Shown one piece after another: positions 58,130-64,000 of a stretch of 64,000 nucleotides of DNA. The first letter of the stretch is position 1, and each line of letters starts with the position of its first letter. Both the position numbers and the translations under genes were made by a program. The DNA lies in the IMG/VR virus record IMGVR_UViG_3300034358_000008, positions 260,913-324,912 of that record, one strand, 5' to 3'. The notes under the pieces are model-generated. The model was not told the DNA's origin. It made no database searches and saw only the letters and a program-made list of their open reading frames with translations.

Positions 58130-59014
58130 ATGATCAAGCTCAAACTAGTATCGCATAACGGTCGTGGTATGACTCCACGTGAATGGACAACTATTGACGC
58201 TCCGGTGTTTAAAGGAGGTGAGGTTAATCCTTGCCTTCACATTGACATCATCAATGCTCTGCCTTATGCAGCTAACGTAACACTCAAGACTTACTTGAAC
58301 GACCCGGCTACTGGCTTTGAACTGATGTTGGTAGTAGATGCTATCCGTCAGATCAACCCAGAAGTAAAGCTATTCCTTGAAATGGGTTACACGCCATACG
58401 CCCGGCAAGACCGTGTATGCAATCCGGGTGAAGCTAACGGGATCGCCGTATTCGCTCGGGTACTCAACATGCTGAAGTTTAACGAGGTTCGTATTCTCGA
58501 TCCTCACAGCGATGTTGCTCCTGCGGTGATCAACAACTCGGTGATTCGTTCACTGGCTGAAGTGATCCAGATCGTACAAGACTACAATCCTGAGAACATC
58601 AAGGACACGTACTTGGTAGCTCCTGATGCAGGGGCACAGAAACGTGTGAAAGCACTGGCTAAAGAACTAGGTGCTGCTGGCTACATCTTTGCAACCAAAG
58701 AACGTGATCTTGAAACCATGGAGATCACAGGTACTCGATTCGATTCGGATACCACAGGTAAGAAACTGTTGGTGGTAGACGACATCTGTGATGGTGGTCG
58801 TACTTTCATTGCTCTGGCTAAAGCTATTCGTGAACATGGCGAACCGGCTAAGCTGGAACTCTGGGTTACTCACGGTATCTTCTCCTACGGCACTGAAGTT
58901 GTGACTGAGCATTACGATGCTGTTACTTCCACGAACACTTTCCAGCCTTACGCCTTGGGTAACAAGGATAACGCTGGTAATGTCAATCCAAAAATGAACT
59001 GGCTGAATATTTAA
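58130..59014 (+). CDS. prs: Ribose-phosphate pyrophosphokinase-like (NARP1 Adps-type ADPR-PP synthetase)
   Basis: F.GGE, PYARQDR, DPHS, APDAGA, VVDDICDGGRTF, VTHGIFS; paired with the NAMPT-like gene. Confidence 0.88.
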   Translation: MIKLKLVSHNGRGMTPREWTTIDAPVFKGGEVNPCLHIDIINALPYAANVTLKTYLNDPATGFELMLVVDAIRQINPEVKLFLEMGYTPYARQDRVCNPGEANGIAVFARVLNMLKFNEVRILDPHSDVAPAVINNSVIRSLAEVIQIVQDYNPENIKDTYLVAPDAGAQKRVKALAKELGAAGYIFATKERDLETMEITGTRFDSDTTGKKLLVVDDICDGGRTFIALAKAIREHGEPAKLELWVTHGIFSYGTEVVTEHYDAVTSTNTFQPYALGNKDNAGNVNPKMNWLNI

Positions 59015-59024
59015 GGGATACCGA

Positions 59025-60761
59025 ATGTCTACTAATTTCGAATTGTTTGCCCCAACCGTTGCTGACGGCTACAAAATGGGCCATGGTCCACTCTATCCAG
59101 AAGGCACTAACTTCGCTTACGGTAACGGTACTCCACGTTCCGACCGCCTGTTCATGGGTTCCAAGTCCCAATCGATTCACTGGGATAACAAAGTAGTATG
59201 GTTCGGTATTCAAGCAGTGATGCGTGAAGTACACGGCCTGTGGGAACGCAGTTTCTTTAATAAAGATAAGAACTCTGTGATCCGCCGTTACAAACGTCGT
59301 ATGGAAACCTACCTCGGTGAAGGCATGGTTGATATCGAAGCAATGGCTGCTCTGCACGATCTGGGCTACCTGCCTATTACTGTGCTGAGTATTCCAGAAG
59401 GTTCCCGCCTGAACATGAACGTTCCGGGTTACGTGATCTATAACACTGTCCCTGAGTTCTACTGGGTAGTGAACTATCTCGAAACCATCATGTCCTCGCT
59501 GATCTGGGCAATGATCACCAACGCGACTATCGCTTACGAGTATCGTCGTGTACTGGAGCACTTCGCTGAGCTGACCGGTTCCCCAATCGAGTCCATCGAC
59601 TTCCAAGGTCATGACTTTGCACTGCGTGGTATCAACAACCCATACGCAGCAGCCTTCTCGAACTCCGGTCACTTGATCTTCTTTAAAGGTACTGACACTC
59701 TGCCTGCGATTGACTTCGTAGAAGACATGTACTTTGCTAATGCTGAGAAAGAGTTCCTTGCTACGTCGGTAGTAGCTACCGAACACGCCGTGGCAACTTC
59801 GAACATTCTCTACAACCTCGAAATGTGGTTGCGTGAACAAGGTACTGCTCGAGCTGATCTGGATGTTGCAGCTTACGCTAAAGCGCAGTTGGTTGCTGAA
59901 CGTAAGTTCATTCTGGAAGCCATTACCAAGAAAGTCCCACGTGGGATTATCTCGTTGGTATGTGACTCGTTTGACTTCTGGGGTGTTCTGACTGTAGTGG
60001 CTCCTTCGCTGAAAGAAGAGATCCTCGCTCGTCAACCAGATGCTAACGGTCTGGCTAAAGTGGTGTTCCGTCCAGATTCGGGTGACCCAGTAGAAGTGAT
60101 CTGTGGTGTTGAGATCCTGACTGTATCTGAAGTCTCGGATCTGATTCAGGCAGGTAAATGGGTTACCGGTAAGTTCGTCAGCATCGATGGCGTGATCAAC
60201 AAGATCTCTCTGGAACGTGATGGCTACGAATATACTCCGGTAGAACTGACCGCTGAACAGAAGGGTGCTGTTCAGGTCCTCTGGGAGATCTTTGGTGGCA
60301 CGGAAACCGCACTGGGGTACAAAGTCCTGCACGAACGTGTTGGCTTGATCTACGGCGATTCTATCACCGTTGAGCGTACTCAAGAAATCATGCGTCGCCT
60401 GATGAAGAAAGGCTTCGCTAGCTGCAACTGGGTACTGGGTATCGGTTCGTACACCTATCAACACAACACACGTGATACCTTTGGCTTTGCTGTTAAAGCA
60501 ACTGCTATTCAGGTTGAAGACGTATTCGTTGAGTTGTTCAAAGCACCGAAGACTGAAGGGACTACTGCCAAGAAATCGGCAATGGGTTTCCTTAAAGTTG
60601 AACGTGCTGCTAACGGTGACTACGTACTCCAACAAAACCAAACCTTCGGGATTGATGAAATCGATACGGCATCGGGTGAACTGAAACCTGTCTATAAAGA
60701 CGGTACCTTCCCTAATGAAGTAACCTTTGCACAAGTACGTGAGCGTGCAGCTCGGGGCTAA
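59025..60761 (+). CDS. nadV: Nicotinamide phosphoribosyltransferase-like (NARP1 Namat-type)
   Basis: DGYK.GH..LYP, HDFALRG, GTDT, ATEH, RPDSGDP, LIYGDSI, GIGS, RDTFGFAVK, KKSA.G. Confidence 0.9.
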   Translation: MSTNFELFAPTVADGYKMGHGPLYPEGTNFAYGNGTPRSDRLFMGSKSQSIHWDNKVVWFGIQAVMREVHGLWERSFFNKDKNSVIRRYKRRMETYLGEGMVDIEAMAALHDLGYLPITVLSIPEGSRLNMNVPGYVIYNTVPEFYWVVNYLETIMSSLIWAMITNATIAYEYRRVLEHFAELTGSPIESIDFQGHDFALRGINNPYAAAFSNSGHLIFFKGTDTLPAIDFVEDMYFANAEKEFLATSVVATEHAVATSNILYNLEMWLREQGTARADLDVAAYAKAQLVAERKFILEAITKKVPRGIISLVCDSFDFWGVLTVVAPSLKEEILARQPDANGLAKVVFRPDSGDPVEVICGVEILTVSEVSDLIQAGKWVTGKFVSIDGVINKISLERDGYEYTPVELTAEQKGAVQVLWEIFGGTETALGYKVLHERVGLIYGDSITVERTQEIMRRLMKKGFASCNWVLGIGSYTYQHNTRDTFGFAVKATAIQVEDVFVELFKAPKTEGTTAKKSAMGFLKVERAANGDYVLQQNQTFGIDEIDTASGELKPVYKDGTFPNEVTFAQVRERAARG

Positions 60762-60762
60762 G

Positions 60763-61161
60763 ATGATCTTCACTATGGATCTACTCAATAAACATCCAAC
60801 CTATCGTGAGGCGCTTAAGACATTCCTTGAGCATCCCTGCGTTAAGGATGGAGTACTGTGTGAATACGGTAGTCCTGTAAAGGGTGAGTTAGATTTCGCA
60901 TCGTGGATGAAACGTGTAATGCATGTCGATGACGATCGCATCTGTGTGCGGTTAACTAACCCAGTATGGGAGGATATTAGCGTTAGCTTTACGGCTGAGC
61001 CTTATGGTCCATTCGCTGAAACATTCATGGCTCTTCGTGAGTGTGGTGCACGCTTTGCCATATCGACACGTAAGTTAGAGGGTCAGGGTGGTGAAGTTCG
61101 TCAGGTCTATGCATTAGACATGATTGACTACAGACGCCATATCGACCATCAACCTCAGTAA
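60763..61161 (+). CDS. Hypothetical protein
   Basis: ATG immediately after the NAMPT stop. Confidence 0.65.
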   Translation: MIFTMDLLNKHPTYREALKTFLEHPCVKDGVLCEYGSPVKGELDFASWMKRVMHVDDDRICVRLTNPVWEDISVSFTAEPYGPFAETFMALRECGARFAISTRKLEGQGGEVRQVYALDMIDYRRHIDHQPQ

Positions 61162-61162
61162 C

Positions 61163-61210
61163 GACATATCGCTCCTACCTTCGGGTAGGAGCTTTCTTTT
61201 ATTTCTTTTT
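61163..61210 (+). terminator. Intrinsic terminator
   Basis: GCTCCTACC-TTCG-GGTAGGAGC with T tract. Confidence 0.85.
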
Positions 61211-61218
61211 GGTGATCT

Positions 61219-61422
61219 ATGCATCCGTTAGCTCCGCTATTAACAATGTTGCTATCCATGGTACTGGTGTTTGGATTTAACTATTGTTGGATGGGTAGCG
61301 CAAAGCCAGTATACAACAATCCTGTCGTCTTTAATGATGGTGGTAACCCATGGTGGCTAATTCCGATCTTTCTTTCATTTGTTGGGTTCGTAGCTAGTTT
61401 AATCTGGCTGGGTGGTCAATAG
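61219..61422 (+). CDS. Small 2-TM membrane protein
   Basis: Hydrophobic pattern; GGTGA RBS. Confidence 0.6.
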   Translation: MHPLAPLLTMLLSMVLVFGFNYCWMGSAKPVYNNPVVFNDGGNPWWLIPIFLSFVGFVASLIWLGGQ

Positions 61423-61445
61423 ATTTTATTTGAGATCTATATCAT
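61417..61445 (+). promoter_or_regulatory. Putative early promoter
   Basis: CAATAGATTTTATTTGAGATCTATATCAT. Confidence 0.65.
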
Positions 61446-61480
61446 GCTCTCGTAAGCAATATTAACTAGAGGAAAATAAA

Positions 61481-62611
61481 ATGGCTCCGATGGCAAAGAT
61501 TACATTTAAAGCTCTACTCGATTGGTTCATGGAAACCAATGCTCGGTATTGGAATATCCATGTACAAGCTGCGCAGTTCGATTCGCAAGAATACATCTCC
61601 ACTATGAGCCCTGCTACGGGTATGATCTGTTTGAACATCTCGGCTAACGCTACCCGCGGGTTCGATATGGATGATGAGAAGTTCTGGTTCTGGTCTCGGT
61701 TCCAAGGTAAAGAGATCTTCCTCGAAGTTCCTTACACGGCTGTAATGTGCGCAGTTGATCCAGAAACCGGTATCCCTAATTTGTTCCCGTACTTCGAAGA
61801 CTGGGGTGATATTGAAATGGACCTGCCTGATGAACTGAAACCAACAGATATTGAAATCATGCCTAACGGCAATCACCTCATCCGGTTTGGTAATAATACT
61901 TCTCAGGAAATGGAACCTTTGTCAGACGAAGAGGTAGAAGCTCTGCGTGCCGATATCCTCGCTCGGGCAAAACCAGATATGGCTATTCCCGACAGCGTAG
62001 TAAAGGTTCTCAACTTTGATGGTAATCCTGTTGAAGTTAAGATCCCAACCATGGCCGAGTTGGATGAACTTAATAAGCTGTGGCGTGAACAAGGTATGTC
62101 CATTCAGGCAGATGGTTTCACTGTTGGACCAGATGGTAAACTGGTAGTGCGGGCTAGCACATTGAACGATAGTGTGATTCACGTTGACTTCAAAGGTAAT
62201 AGCGTACCCACCTTCGATGGGGATGCAACGATCCTTAACTTCCCCGGTAAATCGGAAATAAAGATCGAAGAACCGAAGTTGCTGAAACACGATACCTTGG
62301 AAACCCGTGTACGGGATCGTCACTGGACTGTCATCGAGGGCGGTAAGACTAAACCCGAAGCTACTATGCCTTGGATCGATACAGTCTACCGTGAGAAGCG
62401 TGCACGCCGTGAAGCAGCTGAATTGACAAAAGATAAAATGGTCATCGGTAATGAGATGAAGTCTACTCAACCAGAGATTCGGTCAGATGGTTCTACCGGT
62501 GAGAGTTCGTTCTTCCCTAATCTGGATGTATCGAAATGCACTTGGCCAGGTAAACGTAAAGCCCGACCTGAATGGTTGACTGTACATAAAGGTGGTGAAC
62601 ATGTTGCGTAA
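61481..62611 (+). CDS. sspB: SspB-like ClpXP adaptor with long disordered tail
   Basis: ALLDWF...ICLNIS.NAT....MDD..F.F.SRFQG....LEVPY.AV.....PETG aligns with the SspB core. Confidence 0.8.
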   Translation: MAPMAKITFKALLDWFMETNARYWNIHVQAAQFDSQEYISTMSPATGMICLNISANATRGFDMDDEKFWFWSRFQGKEIFLEVPYTAVMCAVDPETGIPNLFPYFEDWGDIEMDLPDELKPTDIEIMPNGNHLIRFGNNTSQEMEPLSDEEVEALRADILARAKPDMAIPDSVVKVLNFDGNPVEVKIPTMAELDELNKLWREQGMSIQADGFTVGPDGKLVVRASTLNDSVIHVDFKGNSVPTFDGDATILNFPGKSEIKIEEPKLLKHDTLETRVRDRHWTVIEGGKTKPEATMPWIDTVYREKRARREAAELTKDKMVIGNEMKSTQPEIRSDGSTGESSFFPNLDVSKCTWPGKRKARPEWLTVHKGGEHVA

Positions 62612-63098
62612 CGTTTTAGTAAAGCAGGTTATTGTGGATGCTATCGCCCGGATGGAAATGGTATCCGATTCACTTGATCTGTGGATCGTAATAGCCATGG
62701 CTCCAGAAGTTGTTCCATTGGTAGCTGAGGCGCTCGATCCTGAACGCAACAGCGAGGCCGTAGTAATGGCATTGGGTGATGTAAAATCCAGGACTATGTC
62801 TTTGGGATTGGGCCCACTGACGCGCAATACACGTACGGTTGCTAATGATGACCATTTGTCAGTTACCCTCCCAGAGGGTAAGGTGGTTAACATTCCTTAC
62901 GCTGCTATTTACTGCACTGCTACCACAGGATCATTAGCAGACACACTGGTATGGCATCGTTCTACTGAACTGGGCCAAGACATTGCATACTTGGATATGG
63001 TTGAACCAGAACATGGTAGTCCAAGCTTCCATGGTTTAAGTTCTCCCAATAGGATCACTTATGTCGCCCATTCTAATTCACTAAAGGTAAATACATGA
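62601..63098 (+). CDS. Divergent second SspB-like protein
   Basis: MSLGLGP...ANDDHLSVT...VNIPYAAIYC resembles the SspB core beta region. Confidence 0.5.
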   Translation: MLRNVLVKQVIVDAIARMEMVSDSLDLWIVIAMAPEVVPLVAEALDPERNSEAVVMALGDVKSRTMSLGLGPLTRNTRTVANDDHLSVTLPEGKVVNIPYAAIYCTATTGSLADTLVWHRSTELGQDIAYLDMVEPEHGSPSFHGLSSPNRITYVAHSNSLKVNT

Positions 63099-64000
63099 AA
63101 CCCTATCTTGACTCGATTCAAATGATCAAAGACCTCGGCATCTTCAAAGGTGATCGTACCGGTACGGGTACACAGTCGATGTTCGGTCAGCATGAACGCT
63201 ACGACCTACGTAACAATAAGTTGCCTGTAGTCACCACCAAGAAGATCCACCTGCACTCGGTGATTCATGAACTGATCTGGATGTCTTCTGGCGATACACG
63301 TGTAGACTATTTGATCCGTAAAGGTGTTCGTATCTGGAACGAGTGGGTTAAACCGGAAACCGCCGTTTACGAAGATCTCAGTGAAGCCGAACTTCAAGCT
63401 AAGATAGATAAACATATTGGCGGCCACTGGGTATTGGCTTTCACCACCATCGAAACTGAAGATGGTATTGAAGTTCTTGACATCCAAGACTATCTGGAAA
63501 AATTAGATGCCGCAGCGGTCTCTGCTTTCTGGGGACAATACCCACAAATCACTGACCGCGAAAGCATTAAGAAAGTTGTACGGGTTAACCTGCTTAGCTG
63601 GAAAGAAGCTGAACAGCCAGTCAACCCGTTGGCCTTCTTTGGGCATGAGTGCTTGATTCGCCTACATCGCTTGTTCTTCAAGTCCGAACCACAGCGTTTG
63701 ATCGGTGGTGATCTGGGTGCAGTGTACGGTAAGACTTGGCGTAACATCGAAGACATCCGTATTATTCCTAAACTGGAATGGGCTGACTTCGAGAAACGTG
63801 GTTTTCAATTCGTCGTAGATATTCCGGGTACCGATGCTTCAAGTGATCGTTGTGTTGTACAGCGTCGTATCGATCAACTACAAGATGTAATGGATCAACT
63901 AGCTAATGGTCCAGACTCCCGCCGTATCATCGTTTGTGCATGGGACCCACGTCTGGTAGAAGATCAAGCATTACCGCCGTGCCACTGCTTCTTCCAGACG
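63095..64000 (+). CDS. thyA: Thymidylate synthase with large insertion; runs off the window end
   Basis: ATG 63095; DRTGTGT, TTKK, ELIW, IWNEW, GDLG.VYG..WR, DQL...DSRRIIVCAWDP, LPPCH. Confidence 0.95.
   Translation, partial: MKPYLDSIQMIKDLGIFKGDRTGTGTQSMFGQHERYDLRNNKLPVVTTKKIHLHSVIHELIWMSSGDTRVDYLIRKGVRIWNEWVKPETAVYEDLSEAELQAKIDKHIGGHWVLAFTTIETEDGIEVLDIQDYLEKLDAAAVSAFWGQYPQITDRESIKKVVRVNLLSWKEAEQPVNPLAFFGHECLIRLHRLFFKSEPQRLIGGDLGAVYGKTWRNIEDIRIIPKLEWADFEKRGFQFVVDIPGTDASSDRCVVQRRIDQLQDVMDQLANGPDSRRIIVCAWDPRLVEDQALPPCHCFFQT

What the first reader, a model, noticed from the sequence alone, without database searches (positions are those of the whole stretch)
61481..63098. Tandem SspB-like adaptors, one with a multivalent ClpX-docking tail
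Seen: a 376-aa protein with an SspB core followed by a ~270-aa acidic tail bearing several short motifs (VVKVLNF, VIHVDFK, ILNFPGK, WTVIEGGK, RPEWLTVHKGG). A second, divergent SspB-core gene lacking such a tail follows, and both lie under an early promoter. Established: SspB dimers deliver substrates to ClpXP via one C-terminal XB motif (LRVVK-type; V.VDF/L.V..GG-type in other adaptors). Inference: a phage adaptor, possibly a heterodimer, that hijacks or titrates ClpX with high avidity to redirect proteolysis towards defence proteins or away from phage proteins.
Basis: partly seen in the sequence, partly recalled or inferred. Interest (0 to 1): 0.62.

Follow-up and report, generated by a model that had tools for sequence, protein, structure and literature searches.

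The report
Phage SspB adaptor pair, multi-motif tail
A jumbo (nucleus-forming type) phage encodes two back-to-back relatives of the bacterial SspB protease adaptor; the first has a long flexible tail carrying several copies of the short motifs that bacterial SspB tails use to dock on the ClpX unfoldase. That makes it a likely viral tool for steering or blocking host ClpXP proteolysis, though binding has not been shown.

Summary
ORF1 (61481-62611, 376 aa) has a genuine SspB substrate-binding domain: Pfam scores it above cut-off, and its profile matches solved SspB structures at E 1e-9. A 271-aa tail follows.

ORF2 (62601-63098, 165 aa) has no sequence-family hit. With a 21-sequence alignment it folds confidently (pLDDT 83.6), and its best structural matches in four libraries are SspB proteins (Z 8.2 to E. 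coli SspB, 99 of 105 residues). ORF2 has no tail.

Only three of the five listed tail motifs are conserved:
- WTVIEGGK (nearly invariant)
- RPxW[LM]xVxxGG at the C-terminus
- V[IV]xVDF, less strictly

All three types also occur in bacterial SspB tails, in a survey of 70 genomes done here. Other chimallivirus SspB-like proteins (phiKZ gp232; the RVTF4/D6/Psa21 group) end in L-T-V-I-x-G-G-K.

A phage promoter-like motif conserved across five phages lies 35 nt upstream of ORF1. ORF1, ORF2 and thyA overlap end to start.

ClpX binding, ORF1-ORF2 heterodimerisation and the cargo are untested. Phage SspB homologues were already annotated (201phi2-1 gp347, RAY gp039). The multi-motif tail and the cryptic tail-less paralogue are the new details. 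I rate it a new variant of a known kind, of moderate interest.

The parts
61171..61192 (+). Intrinsic-terminator-like hairpin followed by a T-run, closing the upstream transcription unit
   Evidence: 9-bp stem, 6 GC pairs, then TTTCTTTTAT
61428..61445 (+). Phage promoter-like motif ATTTGAGATCTATATCAT, 35 nt upstream of ORF1. Probably a promoter for the phage's own RNA polymerase, of the early type
   Evidence: Conserved upstream of ORF1 homologues in 5 phages. 5 copies in the window against 0.36 expected. 17 copies in the genome, all on the + strand. Review statement that such motifs mark early promoters (PMC7598289).
61481..62611 (+). ORF1, 376 aa: SspB-like adaptor with a long tail (homologue of 201phi2-1 gp347). 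The ribosome-binding site GAGGA at 61469-61473 is conserved
61481..61795 (+). ORF1 aa 1-105: SspB substrate-binding domain
   Evidence: Pfam PF04386 32.4 bits, above the 27-bit cut-off. Profile against PDB SspB E 1.4e-9. hhalign against bacterial SspB 97.8%.
61796..62290 (+). ORF1 aa 106-270: acidic linker (net -17) that varies in length and is poorly conserved. It contains VVKVLNF and ILNFPGK (not conserved) and VIHVDFK
   Evidence: The ESM Atlas model of the whole protein has pLDDT 0.52.
62174..62194 (+). VIHVDFK (aa 232-238): semi-conserved V[IV]xV[DT]F[GK] motif. It resembles the alpha-type C-terminal end of bacterial SspBs (VVTVDFGKKK, VVSLDAFRKK) and the PLLDFG motif of the RVTF4/D6 phage lineage
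62324..62347 (+). WTVIEGGK (aa 282-289): nearly invariant internal XB-like motif of the form hydrophobic-x-V-I-x-G-G-K
   Evidence: Bacterial counterparts LRVIEGG and FQVIEGG. The same motif ends phiKZ gp232 and the RVTF4/D6/Psa21 proteins.
62366..62416 (+). Conserved block MPWIDxVYRxKxxRREA (aa 296-312); partner unknown
62477..62539 (+). Conserved block IRSDGSxGxSxFFPxLDVSKC (aa 333-353); partner unknown
62564..62596 (+). RPEWLTVHKGG (aa 362-372): C-terminal XB-like motif RPxW[LM]xVxxGG (compare E. coli SspB RPALRVVK)
62601..63098 (+). ORF2, 165 aa from ATG 62601 (168 aa if from GTG 62592): tail-less paralogue with an SspB fold, homologue of 201phi2-1 gp349. Its start overlaps the end of ORF1 by 11 nt, and a Shine-Dalgarno-like AGGTGGTGA lies inside ORF1's KGGE codons. 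Its stop overlaps the thyA start (ATGA)
63095..64000 (+). Thymidylate synthase gene (runs off the window end), translationally coupled to ORF2; same operon

Best explanation
ORF1 and ORF2 are a phage-encoded pair of SspB-family proteins. They belong to a 325-kb jumbo phage related to 201phi2-1 (chimallivirus type).

ORF1 is built like a complete bacterial SspB adaptor. It has an N-terminal peptide-binding SspB domain, a flexible acidic linker, and a tail with short motifs of the kinds that end bacterial SspB tails. Unlike E. coli SspB, whose one characterised ClpX-binding (XB) motif is at the C-terminus, ORF1 carries three conserved XB-like motifs: V.VDF, WTVIEGGK, and a C-terminal W[LM]xVxxGG. 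It also carries two conserved blocks of unknown role.

The most likely mechanism is as follows. ORF1 is made from a phage promoter and stays in the cytoplasm. It docks by these motifs on the N-terminal zinc-binding domains of host ClpX. There it either hands bound proteins to ClpXP or occupies the docking sites that host adaptors use.

ORF2 is a tail-less SspB-fold paralogue translated together with ORF1. It probably adds or alters cargo binding and can reach ClpX only through ORF1.

Shown: domain identity, fold, motif conservation, motif equivalence with bacterial SspB tails, and operon structure. Inferred: ClpX binding, multivalency, the ORF1-ORF2 interaction, and the cargo.
For: ORF1 core is SspB.

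ORF2 fold. The AF2 model has pLDDT 83.6. The top four of 48,161 PDB representatives are the four SspB clusters: Z 8.2, 7.5, 7.3 and 7.1, each with about 99 residues aligned. The top 16 Foldseek PDB hits are all SspB-type structures, including the Agrobacterium SspB-like 2nys. After the gp349 orthologue, the BFVD hits are phage SspB-annotated proteins, including gp347 and the phiKZ gp232 type. The top Atlas cluster is SspB. Profile matches are in register: 65% probability against the ORF1 family and E 5e-4 over 97 columns against bacterial SspB.

Tail motifs.
- Invariance across 19 or more homologues down to 31% identity.
- The same motif forms the extreme C-terminus of phiKZ gp232 (PKLTVIKGGKK) and of 16 proteins of the RVTF4/D6/Psa21 lineage (PHL[TR][VL]IQGGK). 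This is the position XB holds in E. coli SspB (RPALRVVK).
- In 70 bacterial SspBs, 39 end in L[RK][VLI][VI]x and 31 in VVSLDAFRKK or VVTVDFGKKK. 13 also have an internal [FL]xVI[ED]GG 20-35 aa upstream.
- XB works at internal positions too (PMC12373786).

Supporting context.
- Homologues are cytoplasmic: RAY gp039 and phiKZ gp232.
- The phage has no ClpX zinc-binding domain, ClpP or tmRNA of its own, so any Clp partner must be the host's.
- ORF1 and ORF2 are adjacent or overlapping in 8 independent loci.
Against: - No binding evidence of any kind exists for ClpX.
- The function of the internal xVIEGG motif in bacterial SspBs is, to my knowledge, uncharacterised, so equating it with XB rests on similarity to L-R-V-V-K.
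- No bacterial SspB ending in the exact phage pattern was found in 185,579 species genomes.
- Two strongly conserved tail blocks (aa 296-312, 333-353) are not XB-like and point to an additional, unknown partner.
- ORF2 is absent next to ORF1 homologues in 2 of 10 loci.
- ORF2's sequence signal for SspB is weak. No Pfam hit, Foldseek E 0.16-1, and Z about 8 is at the level the tool says unrelated small barrels can reach.
- The phiKZ SEC-MS interaction study (main text and the supplementary files held) showed no link between gp232 and ClpX.
Confidence: 0.55

Rival explanations
1. Decoy or inhibitor rather than delivery adaptor. ORF1 binds the ClpX N-domains through several motifs, or sequesters ssrA-type degrons in its SspB groove. 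This shuts host adaptors and N-domain-dependent substrates out and protects phage proteins from ClpXP.
For: There are more XB-like motifs per chain than in E. coli SspB. The phage has no Clp parts or tmRNA of its own. The promoter is of the early type. The homologues are cytoplasmic, which is where ClpXP is.
Against: The intact, conserved SspB peptide-binding domain and the conserved second SspB-fold protein suggest that cargo recognition matters. Bacterial delivery-competent SspBs also carry two motifs, so motif number alone does not imply inhibition.
Confidence: 0.25
2. The SspB fold serves here as a generic peptide-binding module with no link to ClpX. The conserved tail motifs and blocks recruit another host or phage partner, for example a different AAA+ machine or a nucleotide-metabolism complex encoded by the neighbouring genes.
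For: Two long conserved blocks (aa 296-312, 333-353) resemble no XB. The genes are embedded in, and translationally coupled to, nucleotide and NAD metabolism genes. The phiKZ interaction data read here show no ClpX link.
Against: All three conserved short motifs have direct counterparts in bacterial SspB tails. The terminal motif sits where XB sits.
Confidence: 0.15
3. ORF2 is not an SspB relative. It is an unrelated small helix-plus-beta-barrel protein whose resemblance to SspB is convergent or a modelling artefact, and its position next to ORF1 is incidental.
For: No Pfam or PDB sequence hit. Foldseek E-values are 0.16 or worse. Z 8.2 is within the range the tool warns can arise for common arrangements. 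ORF2 is absent from 2 of 10 loci.
Against: All four independent SspB clusters take ranks 1-4 of 48,161 chains and cover 99 of 105 residues, ahead of generic Sm/SH3 barrels that cover only about 60 residues. Three other libraries agree. Two profile comparisons align the same strands in register. The gene overlaps ORF1 in 8 loci.
Confidence: 0.1

Closest known systems
Bacterial SspB (E. coli and H. influenzae; PDB 1ou8, 1ox9, 8et3), the ClpXP specificity-enhancing adaptor
   Same: Same N-terminal substrate-binding domain. Same architecture of domain, acidic flexible linker, and short hydrophobic-x-V-[VI] motif at or near the C-terminus. E. coli-type and other bacterial SspBs also carry an internal xVI[DE]G motif.
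   Different: The tail is 271 aa against about 50 aa. It has three conserved XB-like motifs plus two extra conserved blocks. The motif ends in GGK rather than VVK-COOH. It is viral, and it comes with a tail-less paralogue. ssrA binding and ClpX binding are untested.
Alpha-proteobacterial SspB (Caulobacter SspB-alpha; PDB 2qas, 2qaz)
   Same: Its kind of C-terminal end (VVSLDAFRKK; variant VVTVDFGKKK in 3 of 70 genomes) matches ORF1's V[IV]xVDF[GK] motif. The fold also matches ORF2 (Z 7.1).
   Different: In ORF1 this motif is internal and only semi-conserved. That the alpha-type end binds ClpX is recalled from the literature (Chien et al. 2007) and was not checked here.
Chimallivirus SspB-like proteins: 201phi2-1 gp347, phiKZ gp232, Erwinia phage RAY gp039, and the RVTF4/D6/Psa21 proteins
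   Same: Homologous cores (hhalign 99.5%). The shared terminal motif is L/W-x-V-I-x-G-G-K. The location next to thyA is shared. Localisation is cytoplasmic. gp347 is the direct orthologue (31% identity over the full length).
   Different: Only the 201phi2-1-like lineage, including this window, has the second motif copy, the roughly 90-aa conserved C-terminal extension and the ORF2/gp349 paralogue. The genes downstream of the phiKZ and RVTF4 homologues are unrelated to ORF2.
Pseudomonas phage pf16 gp18 (a T4-like phage's SspB)
   Same: A phage-borne SspB homologue proposed to interfere with host ClpXP-linked regulation (PMC5587285).
   Different: pf16 gp18 is a close copy of host SspB with a shortened linker. 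It has no extended multi-motif tail and no paralogue.
Engineered XB-peptide degraders (CLIPPERs)
   Same: They work the way proposed here: an XB motif, at any position in a chain, tethers a bait to the ClpX N-domain and induces degradation (PMC12373786).
   Different: They are synthetic, carry a single XB, and have no SspB domain.

Membership tests
SspB (Pfam PF04386), ORF1 | SspB substrate-binding domain recognisable by sequence profile | tested here: met
   32.4 bits against a cut-off of 27. Profile against PDB SspB E 1.4e-9. hhalign against 70 bacterial SspBs 97.8%, E 1e-12.
SspB (Pfam PF04386), ORF1 | Flexible linker ending in a short ClpX-binding (XB) peptide of the L-R-V-V-K type | tested here: inconclusive
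   A linker is present: acidic, variable and modelled with low confidence. The terminal RPEWLTVHKGG and internal WTVIEGGK resemble RPALRVVK and the bacterial LRVIEGG. They are not the canonical motif, and their function was not measured.
SspB (Pfam PF04386), ORF1 | Binds the ClpX N-terminal zinc-binding domain and enhances ClpXP degradation of ssrA-tagged or RseA-type cargo | not testable with these tools
   Needs binding and degradation assays. No informative computation was obtained.
SspB (Pfam PF04386), ORF1 | Homodimer through the N-terminal helix | not tested
   The N-terminal helix region aligns with SspB helix 1. The oligomeric state was not modelled.
SspB fold, ORF2 | SspB domain by sequence profile | tested here: not met
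   No Pfam hit for ORF2 or any of 21 family members. No PDB sequence hit. Only weak profile-profile signals: 65% against the ORF1 family and 31% against bacterial SspB.
SspB fold, ORF2 | SspB three-dimensional fold (N-terminal helix packed on a small beta-barrel) | tested here: met
   AF2 pLDDT 83.6. SspB clusters take ranks 1-4 of 48,161 chains, Z 7.1-8.2, 99-100 residues aligned. Consistent in Foldseek PDB, BFVD and Atlas. This is a predicted model, not an experimental structure.
SspB fold, ORF2 | ClpX-tethering tail | tested here: not met
   Family members end shortly after the domain and have no XB-like motif.
Chimallivirus (nucleus-forming jumbo phage) gene set, genome context | Synteny and homology with 201phi2-1, Viktualia and phiKZ around thyA | tested here: met
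   The record is a 324,912-bp virus genome. Chimallin itself was not searched for.

The most novel reading that the evidence does not exclude
The pair is a viral two-component ClpXP adaptor. ORF1 would use a multivalent tether (three XB-type motifs per chain) to out-compete host SspB and other N-domain clients for ClpX. ORF2 and the two unexplained conserved tail blocks would supply new cargo specificity. Early in infection, host ClpXP would then be reprogrammed to destroy chosen host proteins, possibly immunity proteins. This would be the first characterised phage-encoded ClpXP adaptor system. It would also show that the internal xVIEGG motif of many bacterial SspBs is a second, overlooked ClpX-docking site.
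Probability: 0.2. Interest if true: 0.7.

Novelty: new variant of a known kind. Interest (0 to 1): 0.45.

Why it matters
Nucleus-forming jumbo phages shield their DNA, but many of their proteins work in the host cytoplasm, where host proteases act. A conserved, probably early-expressed SspB-type adaptor with several ClpX-docking motifs would be a direct handle on how these phages manipulate host proteolysis, whether to remove host factors or to protect their own proteins.

The comparative result also bears on bacteria. About a fifth of the sampled SspBs, E. coli's included, carry a second conserved motif (xVI[ED]G) inside what is usually treated as a passive linker. If that motif binds ClpX, current models of bivalent SspB tethering would need revising.

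Natural multi-XB tails could also inform the design of targeted-degradation tools that use the XB peptide.

All of this can be tested with cultured relatives: 201phi2-1 gp347/gp349 and phiKZ gp232.

Tried and rejected
- Complex prediction. The tool says this is no evidence either way, so it is not used.
- First ORF2 fold, with only 4 sequences: pLDDT 44, unusable. Replaced by the 21-sequence model.
- Megablast of the region against phages found only a 63-nt match.
- Viral-contig scan with the ORF1 family found only 2 loci.
- Genome scan for bacterial SspBs carrying the phage C-terminal pattern found none.
- ESM Atlas look-alikes for the tail (aa 262-376) gave nothing usable.
- Pfam and PHROG on the tail and on ORF2 gave nothing meaningful. 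The PDB sequence search with the ORF2 profile returned only a chance adenylate-kinase hit.
- The genes downstream of the SspB-like genes of RVTF4 and phiKZ were tested as possible ORF2 counterparts. They are unrelated.
- Literature searches for the motif strings (LRVVK, VIQGGK and similar) found nothing relevant. A search for Caulobacter XB evidence found nothing directly usable.
- The phiKZ transposon screen does not mention gp232, and the supplementary files held for the phiKZ SEC-MS study show no ClpX link to gp232.
- Sigma-70 promoter scan: 1 site against 9.3 expected, so host-type promoters are not the relevant signal.
- A shorter pattern, GAGATCTATAT, was not clearly enriched. The full 18-nt motif was.
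- Rejected idea: that the extension aa 290-376 exists only to hold ORF2. P0019 and P0007 keep the extension without an adjacent ORF2.
- Sequencing-run tools were not used. The record is a metagenomic virus and expression was not the point at issue.
Full report
**Context**

The window is the last 64 kb of a 324,912-bp virus record judged complete. Its nearest named relatives are the jumbo Pseudomonas phages 201phi2-1 and Viktualia. ORF1 is 31-32% identical to their proteins over its full length, and gene order is the same around a thymidylate synthase gene.

The local gene order on the + strand is as follows:
- a Prs-like gene (58130-59014)
- a NAPRTase-family gene (59025-60761)
- a small PHROG-7478 ORF (to 61161)
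- a terminator-like hairpin (61171-61192)
- a 67-aa membrane-type ORF (61219-61422)
- ORF1 (61481-62611)
- ORF2 (62601-63098)
- thyA (63095 onward)

**ORF1**

The N-terminal roughly 105 aa are a genuine SspB domain:
- Pfam PF04386 scores 32.4 bits against a cut-off of 27.
- PHROG 8945 'SspB-like' matches.
- A profile of 19 homologues hits solved SspB structures at E 1e-9.
- hhalign against 70 bacterial SspBs collected here gives 97.8%.

The remaining 271 aa have net charge -14. The acidity is confined to aa 106-270; the last 106 aa are slightly basic. The ESM Atlas holds a low-confidence model of the whole protein (pLDDT 0.52), which fits a largely unstructured tail.

**Which tail features are conserved**

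Nineteen homologues were found and aligned. More distant ones were recovered from contigs.
- Region aa 106-270 varies from about 0 to 165 aa in length and is poorly conserved. VVKVLNF lies in a segment missing from 12 of 18 relatives, and ILNFPGK is kept only in the six closest.
- Region aa 271-372 is about as conserved as the SspB core. It contains R-x-W-x-V-I-x-G-G-K (W282, V284, I285, G287, G288 invariant), the block MPWIDxVYRxKxxRRE, the block IRSDGSxGxSxFFPxLDVSKC, and the terminal RPxW[LM]xVxxGG.
- V[IV]xV[DT]F[GK] (VIHVDFK) is kept in most sequences.
- In a six-frame scan of the whole phage genome, W.V[IV].GG[KR] occurs only in ORF1.

**Are the motifs XB-like?**

Three lines of comparison bear on this.

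1. Other chimallivirus SspB-like proteins have cores clearly homologous to ORF1 (99.5%) but tails that cannot be aligned with it. They all end in the same motif. phiKZ gp232 ends PKLTVIKGGKK. RVTF4 and 15 relatives, including D6 and Psa21, end PHL[TR][VL]IQGGK and carry an upstream invariant PLLDFG. This is the position of the ClpX-binding XB peptide in E. coli SspB, which ends RPALRVVK.

2. I sampled 151 Pseudomonadota genomes. 143 have an SspB gene. I read the tails of 70 of them.
   - 39 end in L[RK][VLI][VI]x.
   - 31 end in the alpha-type VVSLDAFRKK. Three of these have the variant VV[TA]VDF[GK][RK]KK, which nearly matches the phage V[IV]xVDF[GK].
   - 13 additionally have an internal [FLM]-x-[VI]-[IVL]-[EDQ]-G-x motif 20-35 aa before the end. 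Examples are LRVIEGG, FQVIEGG and LAVIQG; in E. coli and its kin it is MSVIDGD.
   
   So each conserved short motif of ORF1's tail has a direct counterpart in bacterial SspB tails, and two-motif tails already exist in bacteria.

3. An XB peptide binds the ClpX N-domain at any position in a chain (PMC12373786), so an internal copy could function.

Against this, no bacterial SspB with the exact phage terminal pattern was found in one genome for each of 185,579 species. The role of the internal xVIEGG motif in bacteria is, as far as I know, uncharacterised. That the alpha-type end binds ClpX is my recollection of Chien et al. 2007 and was not verified here.

**ORF2**

The likely start is ATG 62601. 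It is preceded by AGGTGGTGA, which lies within ORF1's KGGE codons, and it overlaps ORF1's stop (62609-62611). ORF2's own stop overlaps the thyA start as ATGA.

ORF2 is the homologue of 201phi2-1 gp349 and Viktualia CDS0061. It has no Pfam or PDB sequence match.

A word-based search gave only 4 sequences, and the fold from them was unusable (pLDDT 44). An exhaustive profile search gave 18 representative clusters. With the resulting 21-sequence alignment, AF2 gave pLDDT 83.6 and pTM 0.77.

The structural matches all point to SspB:
- Against 48,161 PDB representatives, the four SspB clusters take ranks 1-4: E. coli 8et3 Z 8.2 with 99 of 105 residues aligned, Agrobacterium 2nys Z 7.5, H. influenzae 1ou9 Z 7.3, Caulobacter 2qaz Z 7.1. 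They rank ahead of generic SH3/Sm/WYL barrels, which align only about 60-70 residues.
- The top 16 Foldseek PDB hits are all SspB-type structures, although E is 0.16-1.
- In BFVD, after the gp349 orthologue (E 1.5e-14), the hits include proteins annotated as phage SspB, gp347 itself and a phiKZ gp232-type protein.
- The nearest ESM Atlas cluster is an SspB cluster.
- Profile-profile comparisons are weak but align in register: 65% probability against the ORF1 family over the central strands, and E 5e-4 over 97 columns against bacterial SspB.

I conclude that ORF2 is a very diverged SspB-fold protein. It has no tail and no XB-like motif. In this phage it also has a 14-aa insertion and a 15-aa C-terminal extension, both modelled with low confidence.

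**Linkage of the two genes**

An ORF2 homologue directly follows, and often overlaps, an ORF1 homologue in 8 loci:
- this window
- L004
- 201phi2-1 (where a tiny membrane ORF lies between them)
- Viktualia
- L006/L007
- L008/L009
- L010
- L167

It is absent in two. In L166, ORF1-like P0019 is followed directly by thyA. In L168 the downstream 111-aa ORF is unrelated. Both of those ORF1 homologues keep the conserved C-terminal extension.

ORF2 is therefore a frequent but dispensable companion. The phiKZ and RVTF4 lineages have unrelated downstream genes.

**Expression signal**

The 18-nt element ATTT[CG]AGATYTATATYAT lies at 61428-61445, 35 nt before ORF1.
- It is nearly identical upstream of the ORF1 homologues of five phages whose proteins are only 31-60% identical.
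- It occurs 5 times in the window against 0.36 expected.
- It occurs 17 times in the genome, always on the + strand.

A review states that such AT-rich motifs found by bioinformatics in jumbo phages that encode their own RNA polymerases have proved to be early, virion-RNAP promoters, whereas middle and late promoters cannot be predicted this way (PMC7598289). 'Early promoter' is therefore a reasonable inference, not a demonstration. Host sigma-70-like sites are depleted in the region.

**Partner**

The phage genome encodes no ClpX zinc-binding domain, no ClpP and no tmRNA. It has only a sub-threshold AAA_2 hit. Any Clp partner must therefore be the host's.

[quoted passage not shown] The phiKZ co-fractionation study, in its main text and the supplementary files held, shows no gp232-ClpX link. 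That is not strong evidence either way.

**Interpretation**

The best-supported reading is a phage SspB-type adaptor module that tethers to the host ClpX N-domains through several XB-type motifs, with ORF2 as an accessory cargo-binding paralogue.

Whether it delivers cargo or blocks ClpX cannot be decided from sequence. The intact peptide-binding domain and the extra SspB-fold protein favour delivery or retargeting. The larger number of motifs is compatible with either.

Two strongly conserved, non-XB blocks (aa 296-312, 333-353) remain unexplained and imply at least one further interaction.

**Novelty**

SspB homologues in phages are already annotated:
- 201phi2-1 gp347 is labelled 'SspB domain-containing protein'.
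- Viktualia carries the same kind of annotation.
- RAY gp039 is described in the literature.
- pf16 gp18 is described in the literature.
- PHROG 8945 is an SspB-like family.

None appears to have been characterised biochemically in the literature I could search.

New here are:
- the shared x-V-I-x-G-G-K terminal motif across chimallivirus lineages and its match to an internal motif of bacterial SspBs
- the duplicated motif plus conserved extension in the 201phi2-1-like lineage
- the recognition of the gp349 family as a tail-less SspB fold

I class this as a new variant of a known kind, with moderate interest.

**Limits**

The single complex job gave no verdict and is listed only under things tried.

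Noticed in passing
window 58130-59014 and 59025-60761 (+): A Prs-like phosphoribosyl-pyrophosphokinase-type gene (294 aa) sits next to a 578-aa NAPRTase-family gene. The same pair precedes the SspB-like gene in Viktualia and in contig L006. From memory, this looks like the phage NAD+ reconstitution pair (Adps/Namat type) that counters NAD-depleting defence systems. I did not verify this.
   Followed up: partly
window 16229, 33693, 40490, 58080, 61428 (+); 17 sites genome-wide: An 18-nt motif, ATTT[CG]AGATYTATATYAT, occurs on the + strand only and is conserved upstream of orthologous genes in five diverged phages. It is probably the promoter consensus for the phage's own (virion) RNA polymerase.
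   Followed up: partly
bacterial loci L096, L117, L121, L131-L142 (SspB tails): 13 of 70 sampled bacterial SspBs carry a conserved internal motif ([FLM]x[VI][IVL][EDQ]G, e.g. LRVIEGG) 20-35 aa upstream of the terminal XB. E. coli has MSVIDGD there, inside what is usually treated as a passive linker.
   Followed up: partly
window 62366-62416 and 62477-62539 (ORF1 aa 296-312, 333-353): Two tail blocks are as conserved as the SspB core but unlike any XB motif or known family, so their partner is unknown. They persist in homologues that lack an adjacent ORF2.
   Followed up: partly
window 61219-61422 (+): A 67-aa hydrophobic ORF lies just upstream of the promoter-like motif. Small membrane-type ORFs sit in the same place in 201phi2-1 (gp346) and L004, and 201phi2-1 has another (gp348) between its two SspB-like genes.
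   Followed up: no
window 63095-64000 (+), runs off the end: The thymidylate synthase is unusually long in this clade (457-481 aa in relatives). It has a large insertion after the N-terminal segment and is translationally coupled to ORF2 by an ATGA overlap.
   Followed up: no
genome position ~232,304 (+), outside the window: A 397-aa open frame ends in ...SGLKVVRA, an XB-like C-terminal end. I did not examine it further, and it may be chance.
   Followed up: no
window 60727-61161 (+): A small ORF (144 aa from TTG, or shorter from ATG 60764) matches PHROG 7478, annotated 'head maturation protease', at E 8e-12. It has no Pfam protease domain. A gene with the same annotation lies a few genes upstream of the SspB-like gene in Viktualia, in a different position.
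   Followed up: no
window 62745-62786 and 63051-63095 (ORF2 aa 49-62 and 151-165): Compared with all relatives, this phage's ORF2 has a 14-aa insertion and a 15-aa C-terminal extension. Both are modelled with low confidence.
   Followed up: no
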